A stretch of DNA of 64,000 bases from positions 248,001 to 312,000 of IMG/VR virus record IMGVR_UViG_3300041411_000080; one strand, 5' to 3'. A program made the position numbers and the translations under genes. A model generated the notes under the pieces. That model was not told the DNA's origin. It saw nothing but the letters and a program-made list of their open reading frames with translations, and searched no databases. This document shows, piece by piece, positions 229 through 58,227 of this stretch. Position 1 is the stretch's first letter. Each line of letters starts with the position of its first letter.

Positions 229-258
229 GGGCATAAAGCCCCTCCCGAAGGAGGGACC
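229..258 (-). terminator. hairpin terminator with TTTATGCC tail
   Basis: CCCTCC-TTCG-GGAGGG stem-loop followed by GCTTTATGCCC on minus strand, after ORF 264. Confidence 0.8.
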
Positions 259-263
259 ACTAT

Positions 264-1559
264 TTAAGCAACGATGGTTTCCAGAGGATGAGCAATACTC
301 ATCGCTTCGGTTACCAGAGTTTGTCGATCGATCGACATGTTGTTTTTCAAGACAGCAGCACGAACTTGTGCAACGATCTCTGCGTGTTTCTCACCTTGCA
401 GATCATCAGGCAGAAGATCCGGGGTGATGTAACGAGCCAGTGCGTTGTCGAGGTTCTGTTCGAAAGCAGCTTGACGTTCTTCGTTGGTCAGCTCCACCGC
501 CGGAACATCCATGTGCAATAGTGGTGAGGTGAGACCACGACCTAATACAGCAGACGTAATTGGTTCTTCGGCTTGATCCTTCACTTCGCGACTAACACGT
601 TCTACGATCGGAGCAGATGGGTCGGCTTTAGCTTGCATAGCGTTCAGCAGGTTAGCTTGATAGTCAGGCAGTTTCTCACCCGATGCCAGCTCTACGAAGT
701 CTGCCAGTGGGATCTCTTTCAACAGACTACGTTTGTAGCTGTCTTGAGTATCCTGTTGAACCTTACCCAGCATGTTCAGGATGGTAGCACCCAGGACACG
801 TTTGGTACGTGCGTTGCGCATGTTCGGCAGGTGGTTGGACTTAGGCTTGGACTTCTTACGCTTGACCTTACGCTTGGAATCACCATTGTAGTCAGCAACA
901 GTCATCTTGTGCTTTGTAGCGTCAACATTTACCTGACCCGCGGCTTCAATCAGTTCAGCCAGTTCTTGGGTGCCTGGAGTTTCAGGAACGGTCAAGGCGT
1001 CACCCATTTTGTTGTTATGCGACGAGATGATTGAAATTTCACCGCGACGCTCACCGCCGAATACACCATGCTCTTTAGCTTGGGTAAGTTTAGCGATTTG
1101 CTCAGATTGTTCAGTAAATAGGGTCATGATGCCTTTTTCCTTGAGGGATTGTTGGACTGCGAAAGAACCCATTAGTTTTGTTCTTTCTTGAAATTGAATA
1201 TGCCGTACGGCGCCTAAAGTTTTGTACAGCTCAGTAAGGTTTTCCTCGTGTTCATCGTAAAGCTCACGAGCAAGATCCATTACTTCTTGGGAGTCCATGT
1301 GTTGACTTGGGACTGAACCCGAAAAGGAGCTATAGAGCATCTTCAGGTTAGGATCGCCAATCAACTCCCATACCCGACTGTGTACTTGATGCTGATGGAT
1401 ATCGTTATTCAAGGTGGCATACTTCAGCATCGAAGGTTTCATACCCAAGGTGCAAAGCGTGCTACCGGACATGGGCTGGAAGATCTCTTGACAGAGGTTG
1501 TTACCCCGAATACGCTCTGCGTCAGTCCAGGTGTCAGTCTTATACGGGTGCGGCAACAT
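264..1559 (-). CDS. mosaic hypothetical protein carrying terminase-, helicase- and RNAP-like motif fragments
   Basis: long ORF; GGAGG RBS before MLPHP start at 1559; contains LGRGLTSPLLHMD, GGERRGE, ADYNGD and a basic KRKVKRKKSK tract. Confidence 0.85.
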   Translation of the reverse strand: MLPHPYKTDTWTDAERIRGNNLCQEIFQPMSGSTLCTLGMKPSMLKYATLNNDIHQHQVHSRVWELIGDPNLKMLYSSFSGSVPSQHMDSQEVMDLARELYDEHEENLTELYKTLGAVRHIQFQERTKLMGSFAVQQSLKEKGIMTLFTEQSEQIAKLTQAKEHGVFGGERRGEISIISSHNNKMGDALTVPETPGTQELAELIEAAGQVNVDATKHKMTVADYNGDSKRKVKRKKSKPKSNHLPNMRNARTKRVLGATILNMLGKVQQDTQDSYKRSLLKEIPLADFVELASGEKLPDYQANLLNAMQAKADPSAPIVERVSREVKDQAEEPITSAVLGRGLTSPLLHMDVPAVELTNEERQAAFEQNLDNALARYITPDLLPDDLQGEKHAEIVAQVRAAVLKNNMSIDRQTLVTEAMSIAHPLETIVA

Positions 1560-1935
1560 TAGCAACCTCCAACAGTCGATCTCGATGATCACATTCAGCG
1601 TGGATATCCGATGTAACTTTGGTCATCAGTGCGCTGATATTCTCAGCGTGTAGCGCATTAACTCGTTTGATGTACTCGTCACGTGGAAGCACTACCTCAA
1701 CATTATTGAAACCACCGTTGAAGGAGCCGTAGCACGTTTCCTGTGTGGATGGTTCACCAATGTCGTTCAGAATGTTGCTCTGGACACAATAGTCCACGCG
1801 CACAGAATGAATCACCCCCGGATATTCTTTATCCTTAGAGATGTGGTATTCCGGTTTCATGTCAGCAAAGTTCGTGAAGACACATTCGTCTCCCTGACGC
1901 ATCAAACGGGTATTGCCAGTTCTTACCTTATCCAT
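1540..1935 (-). CDS. hypothetical protein
   Basis: 131-aa ORF coupled to neighbours. Confidence 0.75.
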   Translation of the reverse strand: MDKVRTGNTRLMRQGDECVFTNFADMKPEYHISKDKEYPGVIHSVRVDYCVQSNILNDIGEPSTQETCYGSFNGGFNNVEVVLPRDEYIKRVNALHAENISALMTKVTSDIHAECDHRDRLLEVANVAAPV

Positions 1936-2486
1936 CAGTTATCTTCACTCAGTTTGTGTACGGTATGGTTGTGGTCTTCAGACAGGATTACCCAGTCACC
2001 CGGTTTCAGATGGGTCTTAACCTTAGTGAGTGGATGCACGAAGTCAAAGGTAGCGTAGTCATAAGCACCGAAGTGTTCTGACCAATCCATGACTTTAGTT
2101 TGGAGGATGTGTTCACGTGCCCATTCCAGGCAACCACCCAGAGTATGAACCGGAGTACCGTCAAGCTCACCGTCGCCACAACGCTCTGCAAAGCCGATAC
2201 GGATGGCACCGAAGACTTTGTGATGTGGGTTAGGGATCTTGGAGTAAGCTTCCATAAACGCTTGCAGACCAGCTTCAGTGATGGTCCAGCACTTGTCTTC
2301 ATCACCATTGAAACGAACCCATGCATTCTGTACCAGTTCCTGCATGTGAACCTTAGAAGGGATCTCACCAGCTTCACGTGGGTCGTTTACTACCAGCTGA
2401 TACAGATTGTCATAGACACCACCATCCATCTGTAGTGGGGTCATCATTTCCTTTAGCTTTTCTACATCAGTTTGCATTTGCTGCAT
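1935..2486 (-). CDS. hypothetical protein with winged-helix-like N-terminal domain
   Basis: WTITEAGLQAF wing-like motif, similar to upstream ORF. Confidence 0.6.
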   Translation of the reverse strand: MQQMQTDVEKLKEMMTPLQMDGGVYDNLYQLVVNDPREAGEIPSKVHMQELVQNAWVRFNGDEDKCWTITEAGLQAFMEAYSKIPNPHHKVFGAIRIGFAERCGDGELDGTPVHTLGGCLEWAREHILQTKVMDWSEHFGAYDYATFDFVHPLTKVKTHLKPGDWVILSEDHNHTVHKLSEDN

Positions 2487-3517: not shown

Positions 3518-5677
3518 TTAGTAGAAGTCCGAGATGAGACGGGTGTTCTTCTTATCCTGAAGCATGATACCCAAGGATTCCATGATCAGATAGAAGCTAC
3601 CCATCGTGTTAGCGATAGTTTGACGTACGTTTGCTACGCGGGTGATAACCTCAGGAATACCATGGTTCTCAACTACGGACATTGGTACGTGGAAGTTGGT
3701 AATGCCTTTCTTATTGTTCTCGAGTGCCCACTTCTTCAAACGCATAACCAAAGCTTTATCTTCGATCGTATCAAGCCATGCTTCAAAGCGAGTACGGTTG
3801 TCGATAGTCACAGAGATCTTAACGAAGGAATACGGTGGTGCTTCCAAGAAGCCAAACGATGGTTCGAATACTTCTTTCCAGAACTTGTACTTGGCATAGG
3901 TAGCGTTAGTCTCAGACTTGTATGCATCAAGCTTCTTCACTTTACCAGTCGTCAGGTATTCTGCCTTACCAGTATAGATCGAGGTCATGATGTTACGCTC
4001 AATGTCACCAATCTGTTTAAGCATTGCTGGTAAGTCGAGGGTTTCTTCGCGCTTGATTGTAGTGATGACGTGTTCCATCATCTTCTTAGCAGCTTTGTTG
4101 ATACGAGGTGGAACTTTAGAATCTCGTAGCCCAACACCTTTAACTTCCATACGTGCCTTAGCGAACATGATACCCTCTACCGCATCCTGAGACGCGTAGT
4201 AGTGTTTCGATCGGGTAGTCAGGCTCAGTACTGCGAAGTAGTATTCGTTCTTCATAGCAAGCAGGCGGAGCTTCTTGGATGTAACACCCATGTTGATCGA
4301 CTGCAATGCCAGAATGTGCATAACCACTTCGGACACCAAGAACACCAAAGCAAATACCAATCGCTTGGCTTCATCACTAAAGGTCACACGACCAAAGAAT
4401 TCTTCCACCCAGTATTGCATGGTGAACATAGTCGAGTCTGTGTCGGAGATTACTGCTGCACGGCGATAAGCCGTAGGGAACGCGTGGATACTTGGAGGTA
4501 CGTTCTTAGTCAAGAACAAAGCCTTGATAAACAGAATGTACTTATTCAACACTTGGGAGATATTGTTACCGGTAGCGTAGATCAGATCAAACACTTCCGG
4601 GTTTTCTTCAGCGAGCTTCTCGTTGTTACGACCTTTGATCGTATTGAAGTTGATGAAGCTTGCCAGCAACTGCATGTCGCCATCGTATTTGTTGTATTCG
4701 TCTTTAGAGACAACTTGATCTGGTGTACCTACACGAGACAACTCATTCAAGAACCCTTTAACGAGGTCTGGGTTGTATTTGTAAGTGTGGTATAGATCAC
4801 CAACGTACATAATAGCTGCACGGCCAATCGGGGACATACCCGCTGCGAGTTTACGCAGCTGTGCAGTGTATTCAGGGTTGGACCAGTAGTGGGTAGTCGA
4901 ATAGAGGATCATGTCAATGATCTCATCGGCTGTAGGGTAATGCATATTGAAACGCTGCATGCAGTCTTCAAGCATCTTAAGGTCGGTGTTATTGACCAGA
5001 CTGAGCATATTAGCTTTAGTCACTTCTGGGGAGTAGTAGTGACGGTTACCCATGATGAACTTCTCATTGTTTGCGTTAGCATAAGAAGTTGCAGTACGAC
5101 AAGTAGATGTCAGACTCGAGTGGGTAGACTTGTAATAGAGAATCGTTGCAGCACTAACGGTGGCTCCTGAGTAGGAGTTATTGTTAATTTTGAAGTTCTC
5201 TTGTTCGCCTTTACGAACCTGTGCTAATTCGAGTGCTTCAGCTGTACCCTCACCTTCCAACCGCATTTGCTCTTTCTTAACCGCTTTACGGTTAGCAACG
5301 CCTTCTTCAATGTACTTGGCATGAGTAGATGCTCGGATTTCTTCTGGTAGATAAACAGTCATGCTCGGACTGAGCAGCAGTTTCTGCTTCTTTACACGAC
5401 CAAGGTATTGACTGAATCGGACAACCTTCTTCTCCCGATCGCCATTCTCACCTTTGTCCAGAATCATCGTCTTAGGATCGTTGAGTTCGAACTGACCACC
5501 GGGGGCCATAGTCGACTGTACATAAGCCAAGCATTTATCCAGATCATCTCCGGTCATGCTAGAAAGGTACAGCGCTGTGTCACGCATCAGTGGGTTAACA
5601 ATCTCGAGTTCACGCTGATATTCAGAAATGTCTTGGTAAAAGGGATTTGGTTTTACATCGGTGTGAGTTTGTTCCAT
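3518..5677 (-). CDS. family B DNA polymerase, polymerase subunit of split enzyme (phiKZ gp50-like)
   Basis: motif B QENFKINNNSYSG, motif C ISDTDSTMF, KHYY and EVKGV motifs; no exonuclease domain seen. Confidence 0.92.
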   Translation of the reverse strand: MEQTHTDVKPNPFYQDISEYQRELEIVNPLMRDTALYLSSMTGDDLDKCLAYVQSTMAPGGQFELNDPKTMILDKGENGDREKKVVRFSQYLGRVKKQKLLLSPSMTVYLPEEIRASTHAKYIEEGVANRKAVKKEQMRLEGEGTAEALELAQVRKGEQENFKINNNSYSGATVSAATILYYKSTHSSLTSTCRTATSYANANNEKFIMGNRHYYSPEVTKANMLSLVNNTDLKMLEDCMQRFNMHYPTADEIIDMILYSTTHYWSNPEYTAQLRKLAAGMSPIGRAAIMYVGDLYHTYKYNPDLVKGFLNELSRVGTPDQVVSKDEYNKYDGDMQLLASFINFNTIKGRNNEKLAEENPEVFDLIYATGNNISQVLNKYILFIKALFLTKNVPPSIHAFPTAYRRAAVISDTDSTMFTMQYWVEEFFGRVTFSDEAKRLVFALVFLVSEVVMHILALQSINMGVTSKKLRLLAMKNEYYFAVLSLTTRSKHYYASQDAVEGIMFAKARMEVKGVGLRDSKVPPRINKAAKKMMEHVITTIKREETLDLPAMLKQIGDIERNIMTSIYTGKAEYLTTGKVKKLDAYKSETNATYAKYKFWKEVFEPSFGFLEAPPYSFVKISVTIDNRTRFEAWLDTIEDKALVMRLKKWALENNKKGITNFHVPMSVVENHGIPEVITRVANVRQTIANTMGSFYLIMESLGIMLQDKKNTRLISDFY

Positions 5678-5736: not shown

Positions 5737-5757
5737 GGGCTACCCGAAGGTAGCCCG
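5737..5757 (-). terminator. hairpin terminator
   Basis: GGGCTACC-TTCG-GGTAGCCC followed by T-rich run on minus strand. Confidence 0.75.
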
Positions 5758-19187: not shown

Positions 19188-19272
19188 TAAGTAATTCATT
19201 TAAAAAGCAAATTACAAAAGCTCTTTAGTAAACAAGTTTACTGTTGTAAATTGCTTCTCCTAGAATTACTTA
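19188..19272. repeat. AT-rich nested inverted repeat (long imperfect palindrome)
   Basis: TAAGTAATTC/GAATTACTTA, AAGCAAATTACAA/TTGTAAATTGCTT (12/13), AGTAAAC/GTTTACT. Confidence 0.85.
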
Positions 19273-19863
19273 TGCGGCGGGCGGGGTCACCAGCATCCCG
19301 CTGACCAGCCGATCGAATTTCTCGTCATCGAATACATCAAGCGTTTTGGGACAGGTCTCGGCGATGTCGAGATCCTTTATGCATTCAAGGCTACCTTTGG
19401 CGTATATCCTACCCGATGCACTATGCTCATGATTAAAGCCGCCACATGGAACACGGTAAAAATCAGCTTCAATGTCATAAGCAATGATCTTACCGGGTAG
19501 ACCCTCCAATTTAGGCTTATCGCGCATGATGGTCAGATGAACTGGGTTATCTAGAGTCTCGATCGAAATGAATGTCTCTACGTCAAACTCAGTATCTAGC
19601 TTACGACAACCATCATAGTAACCTTTGTTCGGACGCTCATACAGGTAAGGGCTTGCCAGATGCTCGTCCATCCTCTTTCTGAACCGAGCTACACGATCAA
19701 CTACCTTTGGATCTTCCATTTGAATAAGCCACTTATTTACAGTAGCTTTAAATTCTGGAGACGGTTCAAAGAACCAGAAGGTAGCATTACGGAATGAAAT
19801 GATATTCCAAACGTCGTACAGAGCCCACAGGTGCTTTAACTTACCTTTGCTGATGCGTGACAT
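19270..19863 (-). CDS. hypothetical protein, RISKGK N-terminal family
   Basis: MSRISKGKLKHL. Confidence 0.8.
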   Translation of the reverse strand: MSRISKGKLKHLWALYDVWNIISFRNATFWFFEPSPEFKATVNKWLIQMEDPKVVDRVARFRKRMDEHLASPYLYERPNKGYYDGCRKLDTEFDVETFISIETLDNPVHLTIMRDKPKLEGLPGKIIAYDIEADFYRVPCGGFNHEHSASGRIYAKGSLECIKDLDIAETCPKTLDVFDDEKFDRLVSGMLVTPPAA

Positions 19864-27028: not shown

Positions 27029-27086
27029 TACTCAGCGGGACATGATGTGTAGCAATATCGCTACACTACTACTAGAAGGCAATAAG

Positions 27087-27647
27087 ATGTACTCTATCAA
27101 AATCATGTCCCGTGAGAATATGCCAGACGCTGATGTCGGCAAAGGTTTTAAAATGATCCTTGTTGACGCAGGGGATACATTTGAGTTCGGTCATAATGAC
27201 CAAGGTGAACCGATTGTTACCGTCAGTGTTAACAAGGGTGAAGAGAGTAGCTGTATTGAATATCCAGTTACAGGCAATGCCTACGTAATGAGTGAGACAG
27301 GTAAGACTGTAGCATCATTCTGGGCGCGTAACAAACAGACCGTTCGAGTTACCATTGATCCACGTGATCCTGAACCAGAACGAACCGTAAGTGCTATTCA
27401 AGCCGTCGTACGTGAATATAGCGCTGACGGTAAATCGGCATCGCTTGGTCCAGTCGGTCGGGATTCGTATCAAGTTGCAGTCGATCGATTTACTGTTGCC
27501 GATGAGGCGATCACTGACACTACCGATGTAACGACATACAACGCCGAACAACGGTGTATGATCTACCGTACTCGTGTAGGTGTACGTATGAGAAACGGTG
27601 CAACGCAGGCAGAAGCCATGGCTGCTGAGGCACGTTGGATTCAATAA
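27087..27647 (+). CDS. hypothetical protein
   Basis: start MYSIK; AYVMSETGKTV motif; C-terminal IDPRDPEPERT segment. Confidence 0.75.
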   Translation: MYSIKIMSRENMPDADVGKGFKMILVDAGDTFEFGHNDQGEPIVTVSVNKGEESSCIEYPVTGNAYVMSETGKTVASFWARNKQTVRVTIDPRDPEPERTVSAIQAVVREYSADGKSASLGPVGRDSYQVAVDRFTVADEAITDTTDVTTYNAEQRCMIYRTRVGVRMRNGATQAEAMAAEARWIQ

Positions 27648-42497: not shown

Positions 42498-44693
42498 ATG
42501 GATATGCTGCTTTTTGCTTCTGACTGGGACAGGTTCCATACCGCCCGAGCAGACTTTAATACGAAGAACACAACCTTCTTAAAACTCGCTCACTTGTATC
42601 GTGACGAACTTAAGATTAAGAATTGGAAGTTCCATCTGGCTCTGATGCAACCTGAACTATCGGGTGTCGATCCTTATGATGAGACCTTAGATATCACAAC
42701 GAAAGCTAAGATTGCTTTTGAATGTAAATGGAACCCATGGTATTACTTCCGTGAGGTATCCCGTATTCCCCAAGTCGGTTCGGTACCATCCCCGTTCTTG
42801 GCTAACCGTGGTAACATCGCGTTGTACTGGAGTTTCTTTAACCACATTAACTTCGGTCTACTGCAACCACGTCAAACTGGTAAGTCTGTATCAACGGACG
42901 TTCTGATGGTTGGCCTGATGTTCATCTGGGGCTTCAAGACAACTATTAACTTGATCACTAAAGACTCGAAACTGCGAGACGCCAACATTGAGCGACTCAA
43001 GGAGATGAGGGAACTCTTACCTGACTATATCGACATGGTTGACCGTAACGATGCGGACAACTCTGAGATGATGACTTGCACTCGTTTGGGTAACCGTTAT
43101 AAAACTTCGGTAGCTCGTAACGATAAGATCGCTGCGGATAAACTCGGTCGTGGTTTGACCGTACCTATCATGCAGTTCGACGAATTTGCATACATCAGTC
43201 GTATTGAGACTTCCCTGCCGGTAGCACTAGCTGCCGGATCTGCTGCCCGTGATAACGCCCGTAAAGCTAAACAGTTCTTCGGTAACATCTTCACTACAAC
43301 TGCTGGTGACATTACTACCCGAGATGGTAAGTACGCGCACGGCTTCATGACAGGTGGAGCTATCTGGTCTGAGACTTACTTTGACCTTCCTACTCAAGCT
43401 GCGGTTGAACTCGTGGTAGAGAAAGGGACTACAGGTAAGACGCCTCTGATCTACGGTGCATTTAACCACCGTCAGCTGGGCCGTGACGATCTATGGTTGT
43501 TCCGTACGCTGCGTGAATCTAGTTCCTTTGGTGAGATTGCTGACCGAGACTTCTTTAATATCTGGACTGTGGGTGGTGAAGGTTCTCCTCTGACACTTGA
43601 ACAGAAGAAGATCCTTAAAGAAGGTATGCGTGAGCCTAAGCACATCGAACAAAACGATGATGGTTACATCATGCGTTGGTACATCCCACAAAACGAGATC
43701 GCTTCTCGTATGGCTAACTGCCGTGTGGTAATGGGTTGTGACCCTAGTGAACTCCTCGGCGAAGATAACGACGCCACAGGTCTAGTAGGTATCGATACTG
43801 AAACTCACGAGATTCTGTTTGCTGGTCGTTATAATGAAACCAACGTAGCTACTCTGGCTAACTACATTGCTGACATCATTCTCAAGTATCCGGGTGTAAC
43901 ATGGGTACCAGAACGTAAGTCTACCGGTATTAGCTTGATCGACATCGTGATCCTGATTCTGCACTCAAGAGGCATCGACCCATTTCGTCGTATCTTCAAC
44001 CGTGTAGTCGACGAAGCACAACTCATGGAATCGGAATACGAAACTATCCGGGCAACTCCGGTTACTCAACGTACTCCACAGTTCTACGATCGATTCAAAC
44101 GTCACTTCGGATTCAACACCGCAGGTAGTGGTCGTTACTCGCGTAATGCTCTCTACAAAGATTCGCTGGGTAGTTCCGTGGATCTTGGTGGTCGGACTAT
44201 GAACGACAAACAACTCATTACTGAGATGCTCGCCCTTACGATTAAGAACGGTCGTATTGACCACAACAACGACGCACACGACGACATGTGTGTATCGATG
44301 CTGTTGGCTCACTGGGTATGTATCCGTGGTGAGAACTTGGACTTCTACGGTATCAACTCTAAGACGATCTTCTCTCGGGCTACTACACGAGATGTTGAGC
44401 AGACTAACGTTGAGATCTATCGTGACTCGCAATCACGTAAGTATAAAGAAGAGTTCGATATGCTGGTCGAGAAGCTTAAAGGTGAATCCAACAAAATGGT
44501 TATCACCAAACTCGAAATGCGTATCCGTGCTATTTCTCGTTGGATTGATGTGTCTGATGCTGGCGGCGTTGGTATCGATGCCTTGATTCGACAGGTCCAT
44601 GATGAACGTGTTCGTAAGGTTCGTTCTAACCGCTTCGGTGACGTAGTGCGTGAACAGAACCAACGCTTCCGTGGTAACGCTGTAATGATGTAA
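42498..44693 (+). CDS. terL: terminase large subunit (phiKZ gp25-like)
   Basis: Walker A PRQTGKS, Walker B IMQFDE, TTT coupling motif, nuclease GCDPSE and HDD. Confidence 0.92.
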   Translation: MDMLLFASDWDRFHTARADFNTKNTTFLKLAHLYRDELKIKNWKFHLALMQPELSGVDPYDETLDITTKAKIAFECKWNPWYYFREVSRIPQVGSVPSPFLANRGNIALYWSFFNHINFGLLQPRQTGKSVSTDVLMVGLMFIWGFKTTINLITKDSKLRDANIERLKEMRELLPDYIDMVDRNDADNSEMMTCTRLGNRYKTSVARNDKIAADKLGRGLTVPIMQFDEFAYISRIETSLPVALAAGSAARDNARKAKQFFGNIFTTTAGDITTRDGKYAHGFMTGGAIWSETYFDLPTQAAVELVVEKGTTGKTPLIYGAFNHRQLGRDDLWLFRTLRESSSFGEIADRDFFNIWTVGGEGSPLTLEQKKILKEGMREPKHIEQNDDGYIMRWYIPQNEIASRMANCRVVMGCDPSELLGEDNDATGLVGIDTETHEILFAGRYNETNVATLANYIADIILKYPGVTWVPERKSTGISLIDIVILILHSRGIDPFRRIFNRVVDEAQLMESEYETIRATPVTQRTPQFYDRFKRHFGFNTAGSGRYSRNALYKDSLGSSVDLGGRTMNDKQLITEMLALTIKNGRIDHNNDAHDDMCVSMLLAHWVCIRGENLDFYGINSKTIFSRATTRDVEQTNVEIYRDSQSRKYKEEFDMLVEKLKGESNKMVITKLEMRIRAISRWIDVSDAGGVGIDALIRQVHDERVRKVRSNRFGDVVREQNQRFRGNAVMM

Positions 44694-47532: not shown

Positions 47533-49824
47533 ATGATCGAAACCATTATCAAACTGGACGGAACCGAAGAAGCCTTCAACGCCGCCAAGCCTAACCGCTG
47601 GATGGAATGGGGGGCTGAGAAACTTAAGGATAAGGTGGATTGGACTTCCATCGTAATGGAGGTAGCGGGTTCCTCCCCTAAGAAAGTAACTTCGCAAGTA
47701 TTCCAGATGTCTTTGATCGAACGTACATTGGCTGGTCGCACGTGGTCTCACTACATGTTGGCGGGTAAACTGTACGCAGCGTGGATTCACAAACACCTGT
47801 ATGGTTCTGACGGCATCCCTACCGTTAAAGCGTTGCACACTCGCATGCAACAAGACCGCTTGATGGTGAAACTGAATTACACCACCCAAGACTACATGAA
47901 GATCCAGAAGTTCATTAACCATGACCTGGACTTTGATCAACCACACTTCGCTCTTCACCAGATCCGCAAGAAATATGCTCTGGGTAACCGAGTTACAGGT
48001 AAAGAATATGAGTCGCCTCAATTTACGTACATGCGCATGGCAATGGCGCTTGCTGAGAACGAGCCTAAAGCAAACCGCATCCAAGTGGTTCGTGACTACT
48101 ACGAACTCTTTGCGCACAAGATGCTATCGGCACCTACCCCTAACTATATCAACCTCGGTACTGTACATCGGGGCTTCGCTAGCTGCTGCCTATTCGCATC
48201 TGGCGATAACGGTACTTCTCTGGCGATCGGGAACTTCATCGGCGACAAAATGACCCAGATGTCTGCGGGCATCGGCGTTAACATCATGACCCGATCCGTA
48301 GGCGATGCTGTACGTAACGGTCTGTTCCTGCACCACGGTAAGAAGAAGTATTACGATGCAATGGGTAAATCCATTGTGGCCAACATTCAAGCTGGTCGTG
48401 GTGGTGCTGTTACTTGCTTCTTTGAAGCATTCGATCAAGAAGTTGAGTTGATCCAAGCCCTGCGTAACCCACGTTCGACCGAAGACCGTCGTAACCGTGA
48501 TATGCACTTCGCTATGCTGGCTAACCGTCTGTTCGCTAAGAAAGCAGCTAAGGGTGAAGATATCTTCGCATTCAACCCGTACACTGCACCTGATCTGCAC
48601 GAAGCCTTCTACGGTAAAGACGTAGAACTGTTCGAAACACTTTACGCTAAATACGAAGCAGACGAGAAGTTCGTTAAGCATTACGCTTCGGCTCGTGAAG
48701 TTCTGAAGACCATGCTGAAAGAAGCTCAGGAAACTGGCGTAGCTTACGTGGGTCAGATTGACGAGATGAACCGTCACACCCCGTTCAAAGATCCTATCCG
48801 CAGTTCTAACCTGTGCATGGAAATCGCTGAGCCTACCGCTCCGTACTACGAGATGCCTGACCTGTTCTCTTCGGAAGACCATGGTCGTGGTGAGATCGCT
48901 ACTTGTTCGCTTGCAGCTGTATCGGTTGAGAACATCCCAGATCTGGCTACCTATAAGAAGGTTTGCTACTACGCTCTGAAGATGATCGACTACTGCATCC
49001 TGAATAGCTCTTACGTGTTCCCTCACTTGGAGTTCACCGCTAAGCAACGTATGAGTGCTGGCGTCGGTATCATGGGTCTGGCTACTCACCTGGCTAAGAA
49101 TGGTCTGAACTATACTTCGGACGCTGGTAAAGATGAGATGCACTTCATTGCTGAACGTCACATGTTCTGCTTGATCGAAGCTTCCCTGAAGATTTCGAAA
49201 GAACGTGGTCTGGCTCCATGGATGCATAAGACTCGCTGGCCTGAAGGTTGGTTGCCAATCGACACCTACAAGAAAGCTGTTGATACCATTAAGTCTGACG
49301 GTACTACATTCAGCAACCTGTTCAAGTGGGAAGACCTGCGCGCCCAGATCATCGAGAACGGCGGTATTGGTCACTCCGTACTGGCAGCTTACATGCCGGG
49401 TGAATCCAGCTCTAAAGCGCTTGGAGGAGCTAACAGCATCTATCCTGTACGTCGTCTGACTCTGTCTAAGAACGATCAGAACAATCACCTGTACTGGGCT
49501 GCTCCGTATGGTGATGATCCTGAAGTTAAGTACCAGTTCGCTTGGGATATTCCAACCAAGGACATGATCGACTGCTACGCTATCTTCCAGAAGTTCACAG
49601 ACCAAGCAATCTCTGCTGACCTGTATCGTCGTATCGTGGGTAACACCCAGATCGATATTAACGAACTGCTGAAAGAATACTTCTACATGGTTAAGATGGG
49701 GATGAAGTCTCGTTACTACTACAACACTGAAACCTCGTTGAACCTGTCGTTGGAAGCTATGGAATCTGCACACAGTAACATTACCGAAGACACTGACTGC
49801 GGTAGTGGTGCCTGCAAGATGTAA
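47533..49824 (+). CDS. nrdA: ribonucleotide reductase class Ia alpha subunit
   Basis: ESPQ..YMR, PTP, SCC, SNLCMEI, GVGIMGLA, YY, C-terminal CGSGAC. Confidence 0.95.
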   Translation: MIETIIKLDGTEEAFNAAKPNRWMEWGAEKLKDKVDWTSIVMEVAGSSPKKVTSQVFQMSLIERTLAGRTWSHYMLAGKLYAAWIHKHLYGSDGIPTVKALHTRMQQDRLMVKLNYTTQDYMKIQKFINHDLDFDQPHFALHQIRKKYALGNRVTGKEYESPQFTYMRMAMALAENEPKANRIQVVRDYYELFAHKMLSAPTPNYINLGTVHRGFASCCLFASGDNGTSLAIGNFIGDKMTQMSAGIGVNIMTRSVGDAVRNGLFLHHGKKKYYDAMGKSIVANIQAGRGGAVTCFFEAFDQEVELIQALRNPRSTEDRRNRDMHFAMLANRLFAKKAAKGEDIFAFNPYTAPDLHEAFYGKDVELFETLYAKYEADEKFVKHYASAREVLKTMLKEAQETGVAYVGQIDEMNRHTPFKDPIRSSNLCMEIAEPTAPYYEMPDLFSSEDHGRGEIATCSLAAVSVENIPDLATYKKVCYYALKMIDYCILNSSYVFPHLEFTAKQRMSAGVGIMGLATHLAKNGLNYTSDAGKDEMHFIAERHMFCLIEASLKISKERGLAPWMHKTRWPEGWLPIDTYKKAVDTIKSDGTTFSNLFKWEDLRAQIIENGGIGHSVLAAYMPGESSSKALGGANSIYPVRRLTLSKNDQNNHLYWAAPYGDDPEVKYQFAWDIPTKDMIDCYAIFQKFTDQAISADLYRRIVGNTQIDINELLKEYFYMVKMGMKSRYYYNTETSLNLSLEAMESAHSNITEDTDCGSGACKM

Positions 49825-49839
49825 ACAAAAAAAGAAACA

Positions 49840-49878
49840 ACATAAGACCCCTACCCGAAGGTAGGGGCTTTATGCCGT
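49840..49878. terminator. bidirectional hairpin terminator
   Basis: CATAAGACCCCTACC-CGAA-GGTAGGGG-CTTTATGCCG. Confidence 0.85.
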
Positions 49879-49883
49879 ATCAG

Positions 49884-50315
49884 TTATTCAACAATGCGGA
49901 GACTATCCTTATTGTTTTTGATCAGCATCCCGATCATCTGATCGAATGCCCCGACCACCATGGCACGTTCCATGATGAATGGTGTAACGCCACGCGCCAG
50001 CAGCGGAGCCACTTCTTTAAAGTAGTGCTCGGTGCCATCGACTTCAGCCAGCTCAGCTACGAGCTTGGTGAATTCACCGGTGGTATCGTATTCGTTGAAA
50101 GGACTTTCCCGGTTGGCCTTCATCAAGATGGCATGCCATGTTGGATAGTCAGGCTTTTCCTTGACCATTTCGATCATGGAGTCGTACATGTCCGCACTGA
50201 TTTGGCGCAGTGTACGGACGAGCGGAAGATCCTTTTCATCAAGGGCTTTCTGAATCAGCTTAGCACCGATGGCGCTTGCACGGTTGTTCAGATCGGCGAA
50301 GGCTTGAGCAGACAT
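49884..50315 (-). CDS. early helical protein, paralog family A
   Basis: AGGAG RBS; own early promoter; Y.TW...D.TG...L...DG pattern. Confidence 0.8.
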   Translation of the reverse strand: MSAQAFADLNNRASAIGAKLIQKALDEKDLPLVRTLRQISADMYDSMIEMVKEKPDYPTWHAILMKANRESPFNEYDTTGEFTKLVAELAEVDGTEHYFKEVAPLLARGVTPFIMERAMVVGAFDQMIGMLIKNNKDSLRIVE

Positions 50316-50368
50316 TGTGTAACTCCTGTAGATAAAGTTGAGGTGATATCCGTTTGAATATCACCTTT

Positions 50369-50396
50369 GTAATATAGCGTTTAAAACGATTCTAAT
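50369..50396 (-). promoter_or_regulatory. early promoter
   Basis: ATTAGAA-N13-TATATTAC, followed by hairpin 50341-50366. Confidence 0.8.
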
Positions 50397-50403
50397 GCAA
50401 GCT

Positions 50404-50856
50404 TTATTTCTGAGCGCGCTCACGCATCAGTTCGATAGCCTGATCCAGATTGTTCAGCTCATTGATGTAATGGGCACGTACTTCATCTACCGATACCACA
50501 CCGTAGAAAGGTGTCACGTAGGTGTCGTAGTACTTCTGTCCATCAAACTTAGCGAGCATATCCATAACCTGCAACAACACGCCAGTCTGATCGAACTTCA
50601 ACAATTCGATCTGGTGATTGGTGTAGTTACTGAAGCTGAACCACGTCAGGTAATCGTAACGCTTGCCGAGGATCTCCACGAGAGCATCACGGGAAGTTAC
50701 CACGTCTGCACGCAGCGCTTCCATGAAAGCTACATCGTTTGCACGGATAGCGGTATCCGACATCTCGGTACTGAAATGCATAACGAAGGACATCGCGTCC
50801 ATGTAGTTGTGAATGTCAGCAACGTTGGTAACTGGGGTATCGGTGAATTTGAACAT
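50404..50856 (-). CDS. early helical protein, paralog family A
   Basis: leader TTATCTACAGGAGTTACA shared with the 49884 gene. Confidence 0.8.
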   Translation of the reverse strand: MFKFTDTPVTNVADIHNYMDAMSFVMHFSTEMSDTAIRANDVAFMEALRADVVTSRDALVEILGKRYDYLTWFSFSNYTNHQIELLKFDQTGVLLQVMDMLAKFDGQKYYDTYVTPFYGVVSVDEVRAHYINELNNLDQAIELMRERAQK

Positions 50857-50943
50857 GTTGTAACTCCTGTAGATAACATTGACGGTAGCACTCACCATTG
50901 AGCACTACCTTTTAGTTACAGCGTTTTAGGCTGTGGGCGTAGT

Positions 50944-51393
50944 TTACTGCTTTTCTTCTGGTACCGCAATACCTTTTTCTTTGTCTTCCTCGGCCCAGAT
51001 CTCACACATCATTACATGCTGTTCCGCCAGCTCGAGGACGTCTTTATCCAGTTGTTCTAGGTTGAGGTACGGAACTACGATGGTATCGAAATACTCATGT
51101 AGGTCCAGATTGCTCAATTCGGTGTGCAGTGCCATCAACGCTGCCAGTTCGGATTCACTGAAGAATTCCTTACCACCGATGTTGGCACTGACGTCCAGGA
51201 AGTAATCGCGCCATGCATCAAAGGTAATACCTTCTTTGACCATATCACGAATCTTGGCAACAACCTCACTACCACGAGTCATGGCGGCGAGCATGAAATC
51301 ACGCTCTTTATCGGTGCCCATCAGTTCAGCCATTTTAGAGCCGAAGATGTGACCGGACGCAGCACAGATTTCATTAACGCGTTGAGCAGTCAT
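50944..51393 (-). CDS. early helical protein, probable paralog family A
   Basis: MVKE...F.AW...L...D...YFDT.V.P. Confidence 0.75.
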   Translation of the reverse strand: MTAQRVNEICAASGHIFGSKMAELMGTDKERDFMLAAMTRGSEVVAKIRDMVKEGITFDAWRDYFLDVSANIGGKEFFSESELAALMALHTELSNLDLHEYFDTIVVPYLNLEQLDKDVLELAEQHVMMCEIWAEEDKEKGIAVPEEKQ

Positions 51394-51413
51394 GTAACTT
51401 TCCTTCAAGGAGA

Positions 51414-51773
51414 TTAAATTGTGGTTTCGCCTTCGGTCATTGCTTGACCAAAGTACATCAACATCAGGCCGCCAGCAATAGCCAGTTCGTCACGATTGCA
51501 ATCACCGAATGCGTAACTGCGCACACCATTGAGATTAGTCAGCGAACGAATGGAACACCATTCGAAAGACAGACTTTTCTTACCGACGCGCATGTCGATC
51601 TTGTACTGACCTTTCTCACGATCGATTGGAATGACTTCGATCTGACGATCGTTTTCCCAGATGTTCATGGCTGGGATATCTTTACCGCATTCAACCCAGA
51701 CTTCACCCATCAGTTCGTTGATGATGGTCATGAGACCCTTTTCCATTGCATCTGTTACCGGACATATCGACAT
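51414..51773 (-). CDS. hypothetical protein
   Basis: 119-aa ORF in operon. Confidence 0.7.
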   Translation of the reverse strand: MSICPVTDAMEKGLMTIINELMGEVWVECGKDIPAMNIWENDRQIEVIPIDREKGQYKIDMRVGKKSLSFEWCSIRSLTNLNGVRSYAFGDCNRDELAIAGGLMLMYFGQAMTEGETTI

Positions 51774-51775
51774 TT

Positions 51776-52210
51776 TTAAAACTCGTATTTAGCTTTGATC
51801 CATGGGAAGTATTGATCGTAGGTACGGATAGGACCGACGACCGTAATAGCTTGAATGTTCTGACGACGACTGAGACGACTTACCGCCGCAACCGTACGTT
51901 GATCACGACGAATGATCCGAGCTGGAATGGCATGATAACCACTGACTGGCCAGCTCACGAACATGTCATTGTTTGCATCCACCTGAAAAGTGAAGAACGT
52001 GAACTTCTCAGGACTTTTAAGCTGTGCTCGACGTTTAGCCAGGAAACCAGCGATGCTATCGACGTAAGCTTTCATTGGCTCTTCGAGAATGACCTCTGCA
52101 TTGCAGTCAGTATCGACTGGCATTTGATCATCAGGGATAACCTGAACGGCCACGCCCTTACCGACCAGAGTCGTATCAAGGTGCAGACGATAATCAGGAT
52201 CAAGTTGCAT
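51776..52210 (-). CDS. hypothetical protein
   Basis: AAGGAG RBS. Confidence 0.75.
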   Translation of the reverse strand: MQLDPDYRLHLDTTLVGKGVAVQVIPDDQMPVDTDCNAEVILEEPMKAYVDSIAGFLAKRRAQLKSPEKFTFFTFQVDANNDMFVSWPVSGYHAIPARIIRRDQRTVAAVSRLSRRQNIQAITVVGPIRTYDQYFPWIKAKYEF

Positions 52211-52221
52211 GGTGCTACTCC

Positions 52222-52587
52222 TTATTTACAGAGATCGATTACACGGTCGACGTTAACGATCTTCGCTACACGCCACAGTTTGAAGTATTCACGAATGTGC
52301 TTCTTGGTGCAGTGGATCAGACCACCAAAGTGGACATCACCTACAATCACCACATTACAATTCTCACCGTCGCGCAATACCAGCTCCGAGAAGTTATCAT
52401 CTTCATCAAAGCGCAGTTCGAATTGCGGACGAACCAACTGTTCGAATTCAAAGATGATGTCGCCAGCGTTGGCACGTTCGACCATGTGGTTAATAATCCC
52501 TACGGCGTAGAGTGCAGCCTCATGGCTTTGCTTACCAGTGAACAGATCACGGGTAATACGTTTGATATCGAGTTTCTTCAGTTTCAT
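52222..52587 (-). CDS. hypothetical protein
   Basis: AAGGA RBS, first gene after early promoter. Confidence 0.75.
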   Translation of the reverse strand: MKLKKLDIKRITRDLFTGKQSHEAALYAVGIINHMVERANAGDIIFEFEQLVRPQFELRFDEDDNFSELVLRDGENCNVVIVGDVHFGGLIHCTKKHIREYFKLWRVAKIVNVDRVIDLCK

Positions 52588-52710: not shown

Positions 52711-53874
52711 ATGTCCAAAGTAGATCTCCCGATTAAAATCTTCAATGCTAACAAAACCGACTACGACTCCAAAGAGATCATTCTGGGTCAAGAACCGGGG
52801 CTGTTCGATTCGATCAACAATCACCACCCCGTACTCTTCAACCTTTATAAGCGTTTGAAGATGATGGACTGGGATGAGAACGAATTCCCTTATGCTGACT
52901 GCCTGCATGAGTTTGAGACTTGTGACCGTACGTCTTACGAGATGATGATCAAGACTCTGGCTTGGCAATGGGAAGCTGACGCTACTGCTTCACGTTCGAT
53001 CATTAACGTGTTGGCTCCAGTACTAACTGACTCGCGTGTATTCGCGGGCTACAGTCTGATCACCAGTAACGAATGTCTGCATGCTCTGACTTATTCGGAG
53101 ATCGTGCGTAACTCGTTTAAGAATCCTCAAGTGATTCTGGATGAGATCCTGAAAGTACAAGAAGCTCAAGAGCGTCTGGTAACTGTAGCTAAGGTAATGG
53201 GTGAAGCACACGACGCTTCTCATGCTTACGCTTGCGGCACTATCCCGAATGATCAAGCTCTGTACAACAAGATCTTCAAGTTCCTGCTGGCTCTGTACTA
53301 CCTTGAGCGTGTTCAGTTCATGGCATCGTTTGCTGTGACCTTCGCCTTCGGTAAGATGGGTCGCTTCCAACCGATCGTAATGGGCGTTCAGAAGATCGCT
53401 ATCGACGAGTTCGAAGTACACGCTCAGTTCGGTCAAGAAGTTATCAAGGCTCTGCTGAAAACAGAACGTGGCCGTCTGGCTTACGAACAAACCAAAGAAG
53501 AAGGCACTAAGCTGTTCTGGGAAGTTCTGATGTCGGAAGTTCGCTGGTTGATGTACCTGTTCTCTGAAGGTCGTGAGCTGCCGGGTGTAACGCTGAAGAA
53601 GATGATCCAATGGGTCCTGTTCAACGGTAATGCTGCTGGTACCTTCACTGGCCACAAAGACATGCTGACTGAAGAGCATGCCGCTGAGTTCTTGGCGATC
53701 ACTGGTTTCGAACTGGAATGGCCTGAGAAGAACCCACTCCCGTACATGACCGAATACCTCGATCTTGCTGCAAACCAAACCAGTCCTCAAGAAGTAGACA
53801 ATAACCAGTACATGGTTAACGCTCTGGACACTTCCAACGAACAAGCAGAATTCGAAGTCGACTTCCTCGATTAA
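52711..53874 (+). CDS. nrdB: ribonucleotide reductase class Ia beta subunit
   Basis: di-iron ligands D, ECLH..TYS (radical Tyr), LE..F..SF, IAIDE..H; C-terminal SPQE...Y. Confidence 0.95.
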   Translation: MSKVDLPIKIFNANKTDYDSKEIILGQEPGLFDSINNHHPVLFNLYKRLKMMDWDENEFPYADCLHEFETCDRTSYEMMIKTLAWQWEADATASRSIINVLAPVLTDSRVFAGYSLITSNECLHALTYSEIVRNSFKNPQVILDEILKVQEAQERLVTVAKVMGEAHDASHAYACGTIPNDQALYNKIFKFLLALYYLERVQFMASFAVTFAFGKMGRFQPIVMGVQKIAIDEFEVHAQFGQEVIKALLKTERGRLAYEQTKEEGTKLFWEVLMSEVRWLMYLFSEGRELPGVTLKKMIQWVLFNGNAAGTFTGHKDMLTEEHAAEFLAITGFELEWPEKNPLPYMTEYLDLAANQTSPQEVDNNQYMVNALDTSNEQAEFEVDFLD

Positions 53875-55787: not shown

Positions 55788-55877
55788 GATAGGTTTCCTG
55801 AGGATATTTATATAAGCATAGGATTAAGCCAATACCTACCCGATTATGATATGTTTAAGATTATCTTTGGAGCGAGT

Positions 55878-58220: not shown

Positions 58221-58227
58221 GGTTAGC

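What the first reader, a model, noticed from the sequence alone, without database searches (positions are those of the whole stretch)
264..1559. Accessory protein strung with degenerate signature motifs of essential phage enzymes (candidate immune decoy)
Seen: residues encoded at 507-545, LGRGLTSPLLHMD, align with the Walker B region of this window's own terminase, LGRGLTVPIMQFD-E (43143-43181): 8/13 identical, several codons synonymously different, catalytic Glu replaced by Val. The same protein carries GGERRGEISIISSHNNKMG (1002-1067), which from memory resembles the Walker A region of phiKZ-family DnaB helicases (GGxRRGE...HNxKS). It also has ADYNGD, resembling the RNAP catalytic loop NADFDGD, and LPDYQANLL, resembling a terminase Q-motif. 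Established: pattern-recognition defences such as Avs (STAND NTPases) sense terminase and portal, including active-site residues. Inference: an early-expressed protein presenting non-functional copies of such epitopes could titrate host sensors. Alternatively it modulates the phage's own complexes, or is recombination debris.
Basis: partly seen in the sequence, partly recalled or inferred. Interest (0 to 1): 0.85.

Follow-up and report, generated by a model that had tools for sequence, protein, structure and literature searches.

The report
Mosaic phage protein with enzyme-motif relics
An uncharacterised protein of a nucleus-forming jumbo Pseudomonas phage joins a conserved helical core to short, non-catalytic look-alikes of active-site segments of the phage's own ribonucleotide reductase and terminase; the resemblance holds across the protein family, but nothing shows it acts as an immune decoy.

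Summary
The ORF (264-1559, minus strand, 431 aa) is real. It belongs to a small family of about 50 proteins, all from Pseudomonas chimallivirus-like phages (201phi2-1 gp88, PhiPA3 gp49, Phabio gp75), none with a known function.

The terminase match sits at the stated coordinates. For this one sequence it is no better than chance. The island is, however, conserved in 13 homologs, and a profile built without the window's protein picks the terminase Walker B strand as top hit in two phage proteomes.

- an N-x-C-x-E...Cys island matching the ribonucleotide reductase (RNR) large-subunit catalytic loop;
- an RNR small-subunit-like helix;
- a possible DNA polymerase motif B;
- a module shared with a virion structural protein.

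The DnaB and RNA polymerase (RNAP) resemblances stay within chance, and the terminase Q-motif resemblance is not supported.

The protein is predicted all-helical, with no P-loop or barrel fold. The islands lie in low-confidence or helical segments and come and go among homologs. They show no DNA-level similarity to their source genes. Only a basic-plus-four-helix core is universal.

Best reading: an ancient mosaic of captured gene fragments around a lineage-specific core. The decoy idea is untested, and published work showing that known sensors recognise folds, not linear motifs, argues against it.

The parts
264..1559 (-). Whole ORF, 431 aa (ATG at 1559, stop at 264-266). Member of the 201phi2-1 gp88 / PhiPA3 gp49 family.
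   Evidence: Homologs.
1440..1517 (-). Residues 15-40. RNR large-subunit-like island: N-N-L-C-x-E-I-x-x-P, a variable loop, then C-T-L-G. It matches the catalytic N-x-C-x-E finger loop and the following Cys of the window's RNR alpha (47533-49824, residues 424-460).
   Evidence: Pfam Ribonuc_red_lgC E=0.022, the only hit. NCBIfam NrdE_NrdA is the top hit, E=0.029. Island profile scores 14.6 bits with 0 of 400 shuffles reaching it, and 14.1 bits in Viktualia. N, C and E are invariant in 20 of 20 homologs.
1257..1439 (-). Residues 41-101. Weak collinear continuation of the RNR-alpha-like stretch (RNR alpha about 460-521). It includes K-x-I-N-S-x-Y-S-G-A-T (residues 73-86, window 1302-1343), which equally resembles DNA polymerase motif B (K-I-N-N-N-S-Y-S-G-A-T, polymerase residues 163-176).
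   Evidence: hhalign: 77 columns, P=1.2e-3 against RNR alpha; 14 columns, P=0.02 against the polymerase. Sliding profile scores 11.6 bits on the Viktualia polymerase. Which gene was the source is unresolved.
1122..1190 (-). Residues 124-146. RNR small-subunit-like helix (E-R-x-x-h-M-G-S-F-A-V...K-x-G), matching the window's RNR beta (52711-53874) at residues 198-218, including the Glu that would be an iron ligand.
   Evidence: Pfam Ribonuc_red_sm hit by 6 of 18 members, best E=0.0031. Island profile scores 8.8 bits with 1 of 400 shuffles reaching it, and 9.0 bits in Viktualia. hhalign: 42 columns, P=1.5e-3.
1002..1067 (-). Residues 165-186. GG-x-R-R-G-E-h-x-h-h...KMG island in a predicted disordered linker. 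Some homologs carry a complete GxxxxGKS here. It resembles the DnaB-like helicase Walker A context, but not above chance.
   Evidence: pLDDT below 50.
879..896 (-). Residues 222-227, A-D-Y-N-G-D. D[FY][DN]GDS is present in 5-6 homologs. The RNAP beta' DFDGD resemblance is weak.
594..878 (-). Residues 228-322. The universal core: an invariant basic patch (KRKKSKPKSxH) followed by four helices that include LPDYQANL. This is the only part shared by all of the roughly 50 family members.
   Evidence: Alignments A2, A3 and A5. Commonest-residue fraction 0.80 here against 0.26-0.56 elsewhere. AlphaFold2 pLDDT 82. No fold match in PDB or BFVD.
483..557 (-). Residues 335-359. TerL Walker-B-like island (L-G-R-G-L-T-S-P-L-L-H-M-D at 507-545) plus the conserved L-T-N-E-E-R-Q, in a predicted disordered segment. 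Absent from 201phi2-1, Viktualia and PhiPA3 homologs.
375..506 (-). Residues 352-395. C-terminal helical module (F-E-x-x-L-D-x-A-L-x-x-Y-I-T-P-D-L-L-P-D-D-L) homologous to residues about 695-768 of a 933-aa virion structural protein of phage Viktualia.
   Evidence: BLASTP E=2.9e-4 for the window protein, best 8.9e-6 for a homolog, with 10 members hitting the region. Family HMM E=5e-7. Sliding profile 14.6 bits.
240..255 (-). Hairpin of 6 bp with a TTCG loop, 8 nt after the stop codon. Possible transcript end; the ORF is the last of a co-oriented gene run that starts at the DNA polymerase.
   Evidence: Read directly from the sequence. Not flagged by the terminator scan, which found a similar TTCG-loop hairpin at 5737-5756.

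Best explanation
The gene encodes a chimallivirus-specific accessory protein that is an evolutionary mosaic.

**Core.** Its only universal part is a basic patch plus a four-helix core of unknown fold. I infer this part to be the functional heart, probably binding nucleic acid or another highly conserved partner, possibly inside the phage nucleus.

**Fragments.** Around this core, different lineages carry different in-frame pieces, about 15-100 residues long, that descend from other phage genes. In this window they are:
- a relic of the RNR large subunit spanning its catalytic N-x-C-x-E loop;
- a helix like that of the RNR small subunit;
- a TerL Walker B piece;
- a module shared with a virion structural protein.

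The pieces are ancient and have lost the parental fold, so they cannot catalyse anything. They are kept at the protein level as flexible or helical appendages.

**Shown:** the family, the core, the mosaic pattern, the above-chance matches, the absence of an enzyme fold, and the absence of DNA-level similarity.

**Inferred:** descent by fragment capture rather than convergence, a role for the core in the nucleus, and any present function of the appendages.
For: - **Restricted family.** 17 hits among 5.8 billion proteins and 40 among 1.84 billion representatives, all of this phage group.
- **Universal core.** It is far more conserved than the rest and folds confidently as four helices with no known relative.
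- **Above-chance matches to other genes.**
  - Island profiles built without the window protein hit RNR alpha, TerL and RNR beta first, in both the window and the Viktualia proteome.
  - The unbiased sliding scan gives 5 hits of at least 10 bits. Reversed or permuted controls give 1, 1, 0 and 0.
  - Two curated libraries independently put RNR alpha on top, and Pfam RNR beta is hit by 6 of 18 members.
  - hhalign against each of the 91 window proteins ranks TerL, RNR alpha and RNR beta first to third.
- **Not only enzymes.** Family members share significant segments with virion structural proteins, another TerL region and a tail fibre.
- **Fragment-bearing ORFs recur in these genomes.** Examples are a DnaB piece at window 19270-19863, and a major-capsid piece and a TerL piece in Viktualia.
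- **Dispensable pieces.** They are present or absent lineage by lineage.
- **No enzyme fold.** No strands are predicted, and the islands fall in low-confidence or helical segments.
- **Ancient and protein-level.** Nucleotide identity to the source genes equals the expectation from amino-acid identity alone.
- **Expression.** The PhiPA3 homolog was labelled by RecA-miniTurboID (PMC10643120).
Against: - **Each match is weak alone.** hhalign P ranges from 2e-4 to 2e-2 with probabilities of 2-46%. Pfam and NCBIfam scores are far below their thresholds. One shuffled-proteome scan threw up chance hits near 14 bits.
- **Conservation is unexplained.** Neutral debris should not keep N, C and E of the RNR loop invariant in 20 of 20 homologs while the x positions vary. 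Nor should it keep GRGLT...D. Something selects these residues, and the model does not say what.
- **One segment has two candidate sources** (RNR alpha or the polymerase).
- **The proximity-labelling hit is weak:** 1 of 3 trials.
- **Nucleic-acid binding by the core is a guess** from its charge and conservation.
- **The AlphaFold2 model of the full protein is poor** (mean pLDDT 57).
Confidence: 0.45

Rival explanations
1. Immune decoy or antagonist. The protein displays inactive copies of the most conserved motifs of essential phage proteins and so occupies host pattern-recognition sensors without triggering them.
For: - The islands copy exactly the residues the phage cannot change, and they keep them under protein-level selection.
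- Several unrelated essential proteins are represented in one polypeptide.
- Bacterial STAND sensors are now known for terminase, polymerase, helicase/RecA and many structural proteins (PMC13581612).
- TerL weakly activates an anti-jumbo-phage Avs5.
Against: - The reported sensors recognise whole core folds, independently of catalytic residues. Here the islands are short and lie in disordered or helical context.
- No RNR-sensing system turned up in the two papers read.
- The islands are patchily lost.
- A mimic of a trigger would be expected to activate a sensor, not silence it (inference).
- The PhiPA3 homolog was labelled next to RecA, which points to the nucleus rather than the cytoplasm where sensors act.
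- There is no match in PHROGs or NCBIfam anti-defence families. PADLOC was not searched.
Confidence: 0.1
2. Modulator or dominant-negative mimic acting on the parent complexes, either the phage's own RNR, terminase and virion assembly, or those of a co-infecting related phage.
For: - The pieces derive from oligomeric machines (RNR alpha2-beta2, the TerL ring, virion proteins).
- Similar fragment-bearing ORFs exist for the capsid protein, TerL and DnaB.
- Competition between co-infecting chimalliviruses is documented (my own knowledge).
Against: - The copied segments are buried active-site elements in the parents, not subunit interfaces (established structural knowledge of RNR and TerL; not tested here).
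- No co-variation with the parent could be assessed.
- The islands are dispensable in many lineages.
Confidence: 0.12
3. Chance. The motif resemblances are coincidences picked out after the fact. The conserved Cys, Glu and Asn residues serve an unrelated role, such as metal binding in a small N-terminal domain.
For: - The single-sequence TerL match is at chance level.
- hhalign probabilities are low.
- Library hits fall below their thresholds.
- A shuffled proteome produced hits near 14 bits.
- The DnaB, RNAP and LPDYQ claims fall within chance.
Against: - Five hits of at least 10 bits against about 0.5 expected from reversed or permuted controls on the same real proteome.
- The three best hits land on catalytic motifs of three annotated enzymes, in two proteomes.
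- Two independent curated libraries agree on RNR alpha.
- The virion-protein module is significant by ordinary BLAST and HMM.
Confidence: 0.15
4. DNA-level role linked to mobile elements. The islands act as spare homing sites or landing pads for inteins, introns or homing endonucleases, or are leftovers of their ectopic insertion and later loss.
For: - In relatives, the very RNR-alpha codons copied in the island host two mini-inteins and a group I intron.
- A related TerL has an in-frame insert at Walker A.
- Such elements target conserved catalytic motifs (established knowledge).
Against: - Nucleotide identity between islands and parents is no higher than amino-acid identity predicts, so an endonuclease site is not preserved.
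- No intein, endonuclease or intron signature occurs in this ORF.
- No inserts were seen at TerL Walker B, the polymerase or RNR beta in 19, 30 and 7 relatives.
Confidence: 0.06
5. A highly divergent but active P-loop ATPase or RNR-like enzyme.
For: A few homologs have a complete GxxxxGKS and a Walker-B-like hhhhD[DE].
Against: - No strands are predicted.
- In the window protein, Walker A is degenerate and the catalytic Glu is Val.
- Whole islands are deleted in homologs.
- The two motifs are separated by the helical core.
- There is no PDB or Pfam support.
Confidence: 0.02

Closest known systems
201phi2-1 gp88, PhiPA3 gp49 (YP_009217132.1), Phabio gp75, Viktualia CDS0277 (all annotated as hypothetical proteins)
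   Same: True homologs. They share the core at 45-65% identity and the position downstream of the DNA polymerase gene.
   Different: Lengths range from 264 to 594 aa. 201phi2-1 and Viktualia lack the TerL-like and GG islands and carry a long C-terminal extension. PhiPA3 has a different N-terminus without the RNR-like island.
Class I ribonucleotide reductase large subunit (Pfam PF02867, NCBIfam TIGR02506)
   Same: The N-x-C-x-E loop, the following Cys, and a weak collinear stretch of about 77 columns.
   Different: Scores are far below family thresholds. There is no barrel, no ATP cone and no other catalytic Cys or Tyr, and the protein is predicted all-helical. This is a relic or mimic, not a member.
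Chimallivirus large terminase ATPase domain
   Same: L-G-R-G-L-T-x-P-h-h-x-F-D matches the family motif in register. The motif is invariant across chimallivirus TerLs.
   Different: Only about 14-24 residues match. There is no Walker A in register, no C-motif and no nuclease domain. The Glu is Val here and Asp or Glu in homologs.
Pseudoenzymes and integrated-decoy concepts (plant NLR integrated decoys; phage mimics such as Ocr)
   Same: Conceptually similar: retention of recognisable motifs of a functional protein without its activity.
   Different: Those keep a folded domain or a mimicking surface. Here only short motifs remain, from several different parents, in one non-globular protein. No target is known. 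This comparison rests on my own knowledge.
Extein sequences flanking intein and intron insertion sites
   Same: The RNR-alpha island equals the junction sequence where relatives carry inteins and a group I intron.
   Different: No element is present in this ORF, and there is no DNA-level similarity. The coincidence may only reflect that both pick the most conserved motif.

Membership tests
gp88 / gp49 family of Pseudomonas chimalliviruses | Basic patch plus four-helix core (KRKKSKxKSxH...LGAxIL..LG.VQ...LP.YQ.NL) | tested here: met
   E=1.8e-271 to 5e-37 against family members. Core aligned across 39 sequences.
gp88 / gp49 family of Pseudomonas chimalliviruses | Position a few small genes downstream of the divergent family B DNA polymerase, same strand | tested here: met
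   Window and 201phi2-1, PhiPA3 and Viktualia.
Ribonucleotide reductase large subunit | Reaches the curated family score | tested here: not met
   Pfam 13.8 bits against a cut-off of 23.9. NCBIfam 12.8 against 341.
Ribonucleotide reductase large subunit | Catalytic N-x-C-x-E finger loop | tested here: met
   N, C and E invariant in 20 of 20 homologs. The profile hits the RNR-alpha loop first.
Ribonucleotide reductase large subunit | Ten-stranded alpha/beta barrel holding the loop | tested here: not met
   The AlphaFold2 model has no strands; island pLDDT is 34-58. No RNR among Foldseek hits. The model is of low confidence, so this test is weak.
P-loop NTPase (TerL or DnaB type) | Walker A GxxxxGK[ST] | tested here: not met
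   The window protein reads SSHNNKMG. Only some homologs have GANNTGKS or similar.
P-loop NTPase (TerL or DnaB type) | Walker B hhhhD followed by a catalytic Glu | tested here: not met
   LLHMD is followed by Val in the window protein; homologs have D, E or Q at that position.
P-loop NTPase (TerL or DnaB type) | Central parallel beta-sheet | tested here: not met
   No strands predicted. The islands are deleted in several homologs.
Anti-defence decoy of pattern-recognition sensors | Binds or inhibits a host sensor, and rescues a sensitive phage | not testable with these tools
   No computational proxy. The literature read says sensors recognise folds.
Anti-defence decoy of pattern-recognition sensors | Expressed early, in the cytoplasm | not tested
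   No transcript data. The only hint is labelling near RecA for the PhiPA3 homolog.
Intein / homing endonuclease | Hint splicing blocks or an endonuclease domain | tested here: not met
   No such Pfam, PHROG or NCBIfam hit in the ORF or its homologs. The same libraries did detect inteins in RNR relatives.

The most novel reading that the evidence does not exclude
The family is a selected, multivalent protein-level mimic. One polypeptide displays, on flexible arms around a conserved anchoring core, the least mutable peptide motifs of the phage's own essential machines (RNR alpha and beta, terminase, perhaps polymerase, helicase and RNAP). It would antagonise some factor that recognises those motifs, such as a host sensor or modifying enzyme, or a weapon of a competing phage. 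The fragment-bearing small ORFs for capsid, TerL and DnaB would then belong to the same strategy.
Probability: 0.12. Interest if true: 0.9.

Novelty: new variant of a known kind. Interest (0 to 1): 0.55.

Why it matters
If the islands are only fossils, the gene records how jumbo-phage accessory genes are assembled from pieces of essential genes. It also warns annotators that weak RNR, helicase or terminase hits in such ORFs do not indicate enzymes.

If the islands are selected, the case is stronger. The invariant N, C and E of the RNR loop, and GRGLT...D, are kept in proteins that cannot be enzymes. This would be a kind of mimicry not described so far: several active-site peptides from different machines carried on one scaffold.

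It would give a concrete handle for asking what, in a Pseudomonas cell or in a rival phage, reads conserved linear motifs of phage enzymes.

The universal core is also a confidently predicted helical domain with no known relative, in a phage group whose nuclear proteome is under active study.

Tried and rejected
- **Family libraries.** Pfam, PHROGs and NCBIfam name no family for the protein or its homologs.
- **PDB by sequence.** The family profile finds nothing at E up to 10.
- **Fold searches.** Foldseek of the full model finds only gp88 in BFVD and nothing in PDB. Foldseek of the confident core model against PDB finds nothing.
- **ESM Atlas.** Scores of about 0.5, uninformative.
- **Short tblastn.** Residues 159-193 against all phages at E up to 10 give no match.
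- **Degenerate ATPase.** Rejected on fold, motif decay and island deletions.
- **Recent gene conversion or a preserved endonuclease site.** Rejected, because nucleotide identity equals the expectation from amino-acid identity.
- **Intein link beyond RNR alpha.** No inserts in 19 TerL, 30 polymerase or 7 RNR-beta relatives. The one TerL insert found is at Walker A, not Walker B.
- **Terminase Q-motif reading of LPDYQANLL.** Not supported.
- **Literature.** A search for gp88 gave nothing relevant.
Full report
**Setting.** The window comes from a metagenome-derived jumbo phage contig of 320,858 bp, IMGVR_UViG_3300041411_000080.
- It is related to Pseudomonas phages 201phi2-1 and Viktualia. The DNA polymerase gene is 78% identical in nucleotides and TerL 78% in protein.
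- Relatives carry a nuclear shell protein and PhuZ, so this is a chimallivirus-type, nucleus-forming phage.
- The target ORF (264-1559, minus strand, 431 aa) is uninterrupted.
- It is the last gene of a co-oriented run that begins with the divergent family B DNA polymerase (3518-5677). A small TTCG-loop hairpin follows it.

**Family.**
- tblastn and the two large protein searches find only about 50 relatives, all from this phage group. Named members are 201phi2-1 gp88, PhiPA3 gp49 and Phabio gp75, all annotated as hypothetical.
- Lengths run from 264 to 822 aa.
- The one part common to all is residues 228-322: an invariant basic patch followed by helices.
- This core is much more conserved than everything else: commonest-residue fraction 0.80 against 0.26-0.56.
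- With a 39-sequence alignment AlphaFold2 folds it as four helices at pLDDT 82, and Foldseek finds no relative in PDB.
- The full-length model is poor (mean pLDDT 57) and all-helical. It scores below 50 in residues 156-232 and 325-357, which hold the GG, DYNGD and TerL-like islands.

- The coordinates and strings are correct.
- As a single-sequence comparison the match is exactly what shuffled versions of the protein achieve against the window's proteome: 23.1 bits against 23.0 +/- 1.8.
- With three GenBank homologs the island looked like a private insertion.
- With 17 to 50 homologs it proved to be a conserved motif, hGRGLTxxhhxhD[DE]xP followed by LTNEERQ. It is present in 13 members and absent from others.
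- TerL carries LGRG[LMI]T..hh.[FI]DE throughout the chimalliviruses.
- A profile of the island built without the window's protein and its 96% twin hits TerL 216-229 at 14.3 bits. The next best is 2.1, and none of 700 shuffled proteomes reaches it.
- In the complete Viktualia proteome (466 ORFs, 102,000 residues) it hits TerL at 16.9 bits, next best 2.3.
- hhalign against a 9-sequence TerL alignment gave P=8.2e-5. Against an 18-sequence alignment it gave P=2.1e-4 over 24 columns.

- The chimallivirus DnaB-like helicase really has the recalled Walker A context, with 12 of 29 identities. The family profile ranks it fifth, and 55 of 150 shuffles beat the top score.
- The DFDGD-like profile, built from three sequences, finds the two RNAP catalytic loops first, at scores that shuffles match.
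- LPDYQANLL belongs to the invariant core and matches nothing above chance.

- *RNR alpha.* The only Pfam hit of the protein is the RNR large subunit (E=0.022, residues 13-39). The top NCBIfam hit is NrdE_NrdA over the same residues.
  - The family's N-terminus reads N-N-L-C-x-E-I-x-x-P, then a variable loop, then C-T-L-G. This parallels the RNR-alpha catalytic loop and the following Cys.
  - N, C and E are invariant in 20 of 20 homologs while the x positions vary, as they do in the enzyme.
  - The island profile hits RNR alpha at 14.6 bits in the window (0 of 400 shuffles) and 14.1 bits in Viktualia.
  - hhalign extends the match weakly to 77 columns, P=1.2e-3.
- *RNR beta.* A second island (residues 124-146) resembles the RNR small-subunit helix. 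The evidence: Pfam hits in 6 of 18 members (best E=0.0031), 8.8 bits with 1 of 400 shuffles, 9.0 bits in Viktualia, and hhalign P=1.5e-3.
- *Polymerase motif B.* A third island (residues 73-86) resembles DNA polymerase motif B. It can equally be read as the continuation of the RNR-alpha stretch.
- *Virion protein.* The C-terminal module is homologous to part of a 933-aa virion structural protein.

**Global control.** Sliding 18-column profiles across the family gave five independent hits of at least 10 bits in the real Viktualia proteome:

| Target | Bits |
|---|---|
| TerL | 19.9 |
| Virion structural protein (933 aa) | 14.6 |
| RNR alpha | 12.0 |
| DNA polymerase | 11.6 |
| Second virion structural protein | 11.2 |

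- The same profiles reversed or column-permuted gave 1, 1, 0 and 0 such hits, with a maximum of 11.2.
- A caution: one scan of a threefold shuffled proteome produced two hits near 14 bits. Individual matches are therefore suggestive rather than proven, and the excess is the robust result.
- hhalign of the family against each of the 91 window proteins ranks TerL, RNR alpha and RNR beta first to third.

**Nature of the similarity.**
- Nucleotide identity between islands and their presumed sources equals what random synonymous codon choice would give: 21 of 39 against 21.2 expected for RNR alpha, 27 of 45 against 25.4 for TerL.
- The resemblance is therefore old and held at the protein level. It is not the result of recent gene conversion or of a preserved nucleic-acid site.
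- Other family members carry other pieces: TerL 324-358, another part of the virion protein, and a tail-fibre segment.
- Short shared segments are otherwise uncommon. Only 18 of 467 Viktualia proteins have a non-self hit of 70 residues or fewer at E below 1e-3.
- Several of those are of the same kind. One hypothetical protein carries 45 residues of the major capsid protein, another carries 38 residues of TerL, and the window's ORF 19270-19863 carries a piece of the DnaB-like helicase.

**A coincidence worth recording.**
- In related RNR-alpha genes the codons of the copied loop are occupied by two mini-inteins, inserted immediately before the catalytic Cys (Pfam Intein_splicing above threshold).
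- In a third relative a group I intron sits at the same place (Rfam RF00028 above threshold).
- A distant TerL has an in-frame insert at Walker A.
- No inserts were found at TerL Walker B, in the polymerase or in RNR beta among close relatives.
- Either mobile elements and this protein independently select the least mutable motifs, or element traffic helped move the fragments. The lack of DNA similarity leaves this open.

**Interpretation.**
- The protein cannot be an RNR, an ATPase or a polymerase. It has no strands, its motifs are degenerate, and whole islands are deleted in homologs.
- The best-supported account is a mosaic: a lineage-specific core, which carries the common function, plus captured pieces of other phage genes.
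- The PhiPA3 homolog was biotinylated by RecA-miniTurboID in one of three trials and not by the shell-protein fusion (PMC10643120). That is weak evidence that the protein is made and may sit in the phage nucleus. Together with the basic patch, this is why I lean towards a nucleic-acid-associated role for the core. That step is inference.
- The mosaic account does not explain the strict retention of catalytic-equivalent residues.
- The decoy hypothesis would explain that retention, but it meets three obstacles. Avs-type sensors are reported to read whole folds irrespective of catalytic residues (PMC13581612). The islands are not folded like their parents. They are also dispensable in many lineages.
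- I therefore keep the decoy as a minority reading (about 0.1). Alongside it stand a modulator or dominant-negative reading, a chance reading, and a mobile-element reading.

**Verdict.** The functional interpretation is untested. The feature is an unusual variant of modular phage protein evolution, of moderate interest. It would be of high interest if the motif retention proves to be functional mimicry.

Noticed in passing
L039:31-2934, L042:31-2676 and L038:1268-1496 (IMG/VR relatives of the window's RNR large subunit, 47533-49824): Two RNR-alpha homologs carry mini-inteins of about 145 aa, inserted just before the catalytic Cys of the N-L-C-x-E-I loop. A third carries a group I intron at the same codons. 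L036 and L039 also have a 56-62-aa in-frame insert after residue 451.
   Followed up: yes
window 19270-19863 (-): A 197-aa ORF whose residues about 69-118 are a fragment of the divergent DnaB-like helicase (Pfam divDNAB 33.4 bits, PHROG 3213). It matches Viktualia helicase residues 421-458. This is another fragment-bearing small protein.
   Followed up: partly
window 27042-27647 (+): A 201-aa ORF sharing a 31-residue segment (16 of 31 identities, E=2e-6) with residues 501-531 of the same 933-aa Viktualia virion structural protein that shares a module with the target.
   Followed up: partly
Viktualia PV037725.1 121138-122490 and 153381-153875 (in L014 and L015): One hypothetical protein contains 45 residues 51% identical to a segment of the major head protein (E=6e-9). 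Another contains 38 residues matching TerL 332-369 (E=1e-4), the same TerL region found in family member P0039.
   Followed up: partly
window 55851-58220 (+) and 58195-59217 (+): Two adjacent ORFs share a segment of about 31 residues (KDQISKAGQDGLDPVA...) with a Viktualia internal head protein. They look like paralogous modules among head proteins.
   Followed up: no
L100 (Serratia phage KpGz_1 TerL, MN871444.1 99841-102723): This TerL gene has an in-frame insertion of about 760 nt exactly after the Walker A Gly-Lys, probably an intein. It was not examined further.
   Followed up: partly
window 49872-52510: Five small ORFs with no Pfam match separate the RNR large and small subunit genes. I looked for homing endonucleases there and found none.
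   Followed up: partly
window 240-255 and 5737-5756: GC-rich hairpins with TTCG loops follow the target gene and sit just upstream of the polymerase gene. They may be the transcript-end or processing signals of this phage group.
   Followed up: no
window 1540-1935 (-) and 1935-2486 (-): The two genes upstream of the target overlap it and each other by 20 nt and 1 nt. They have no family assignment beyond an unknown-function PHROG (4365), which suggests translational coupling within the run.
   Followed up: no
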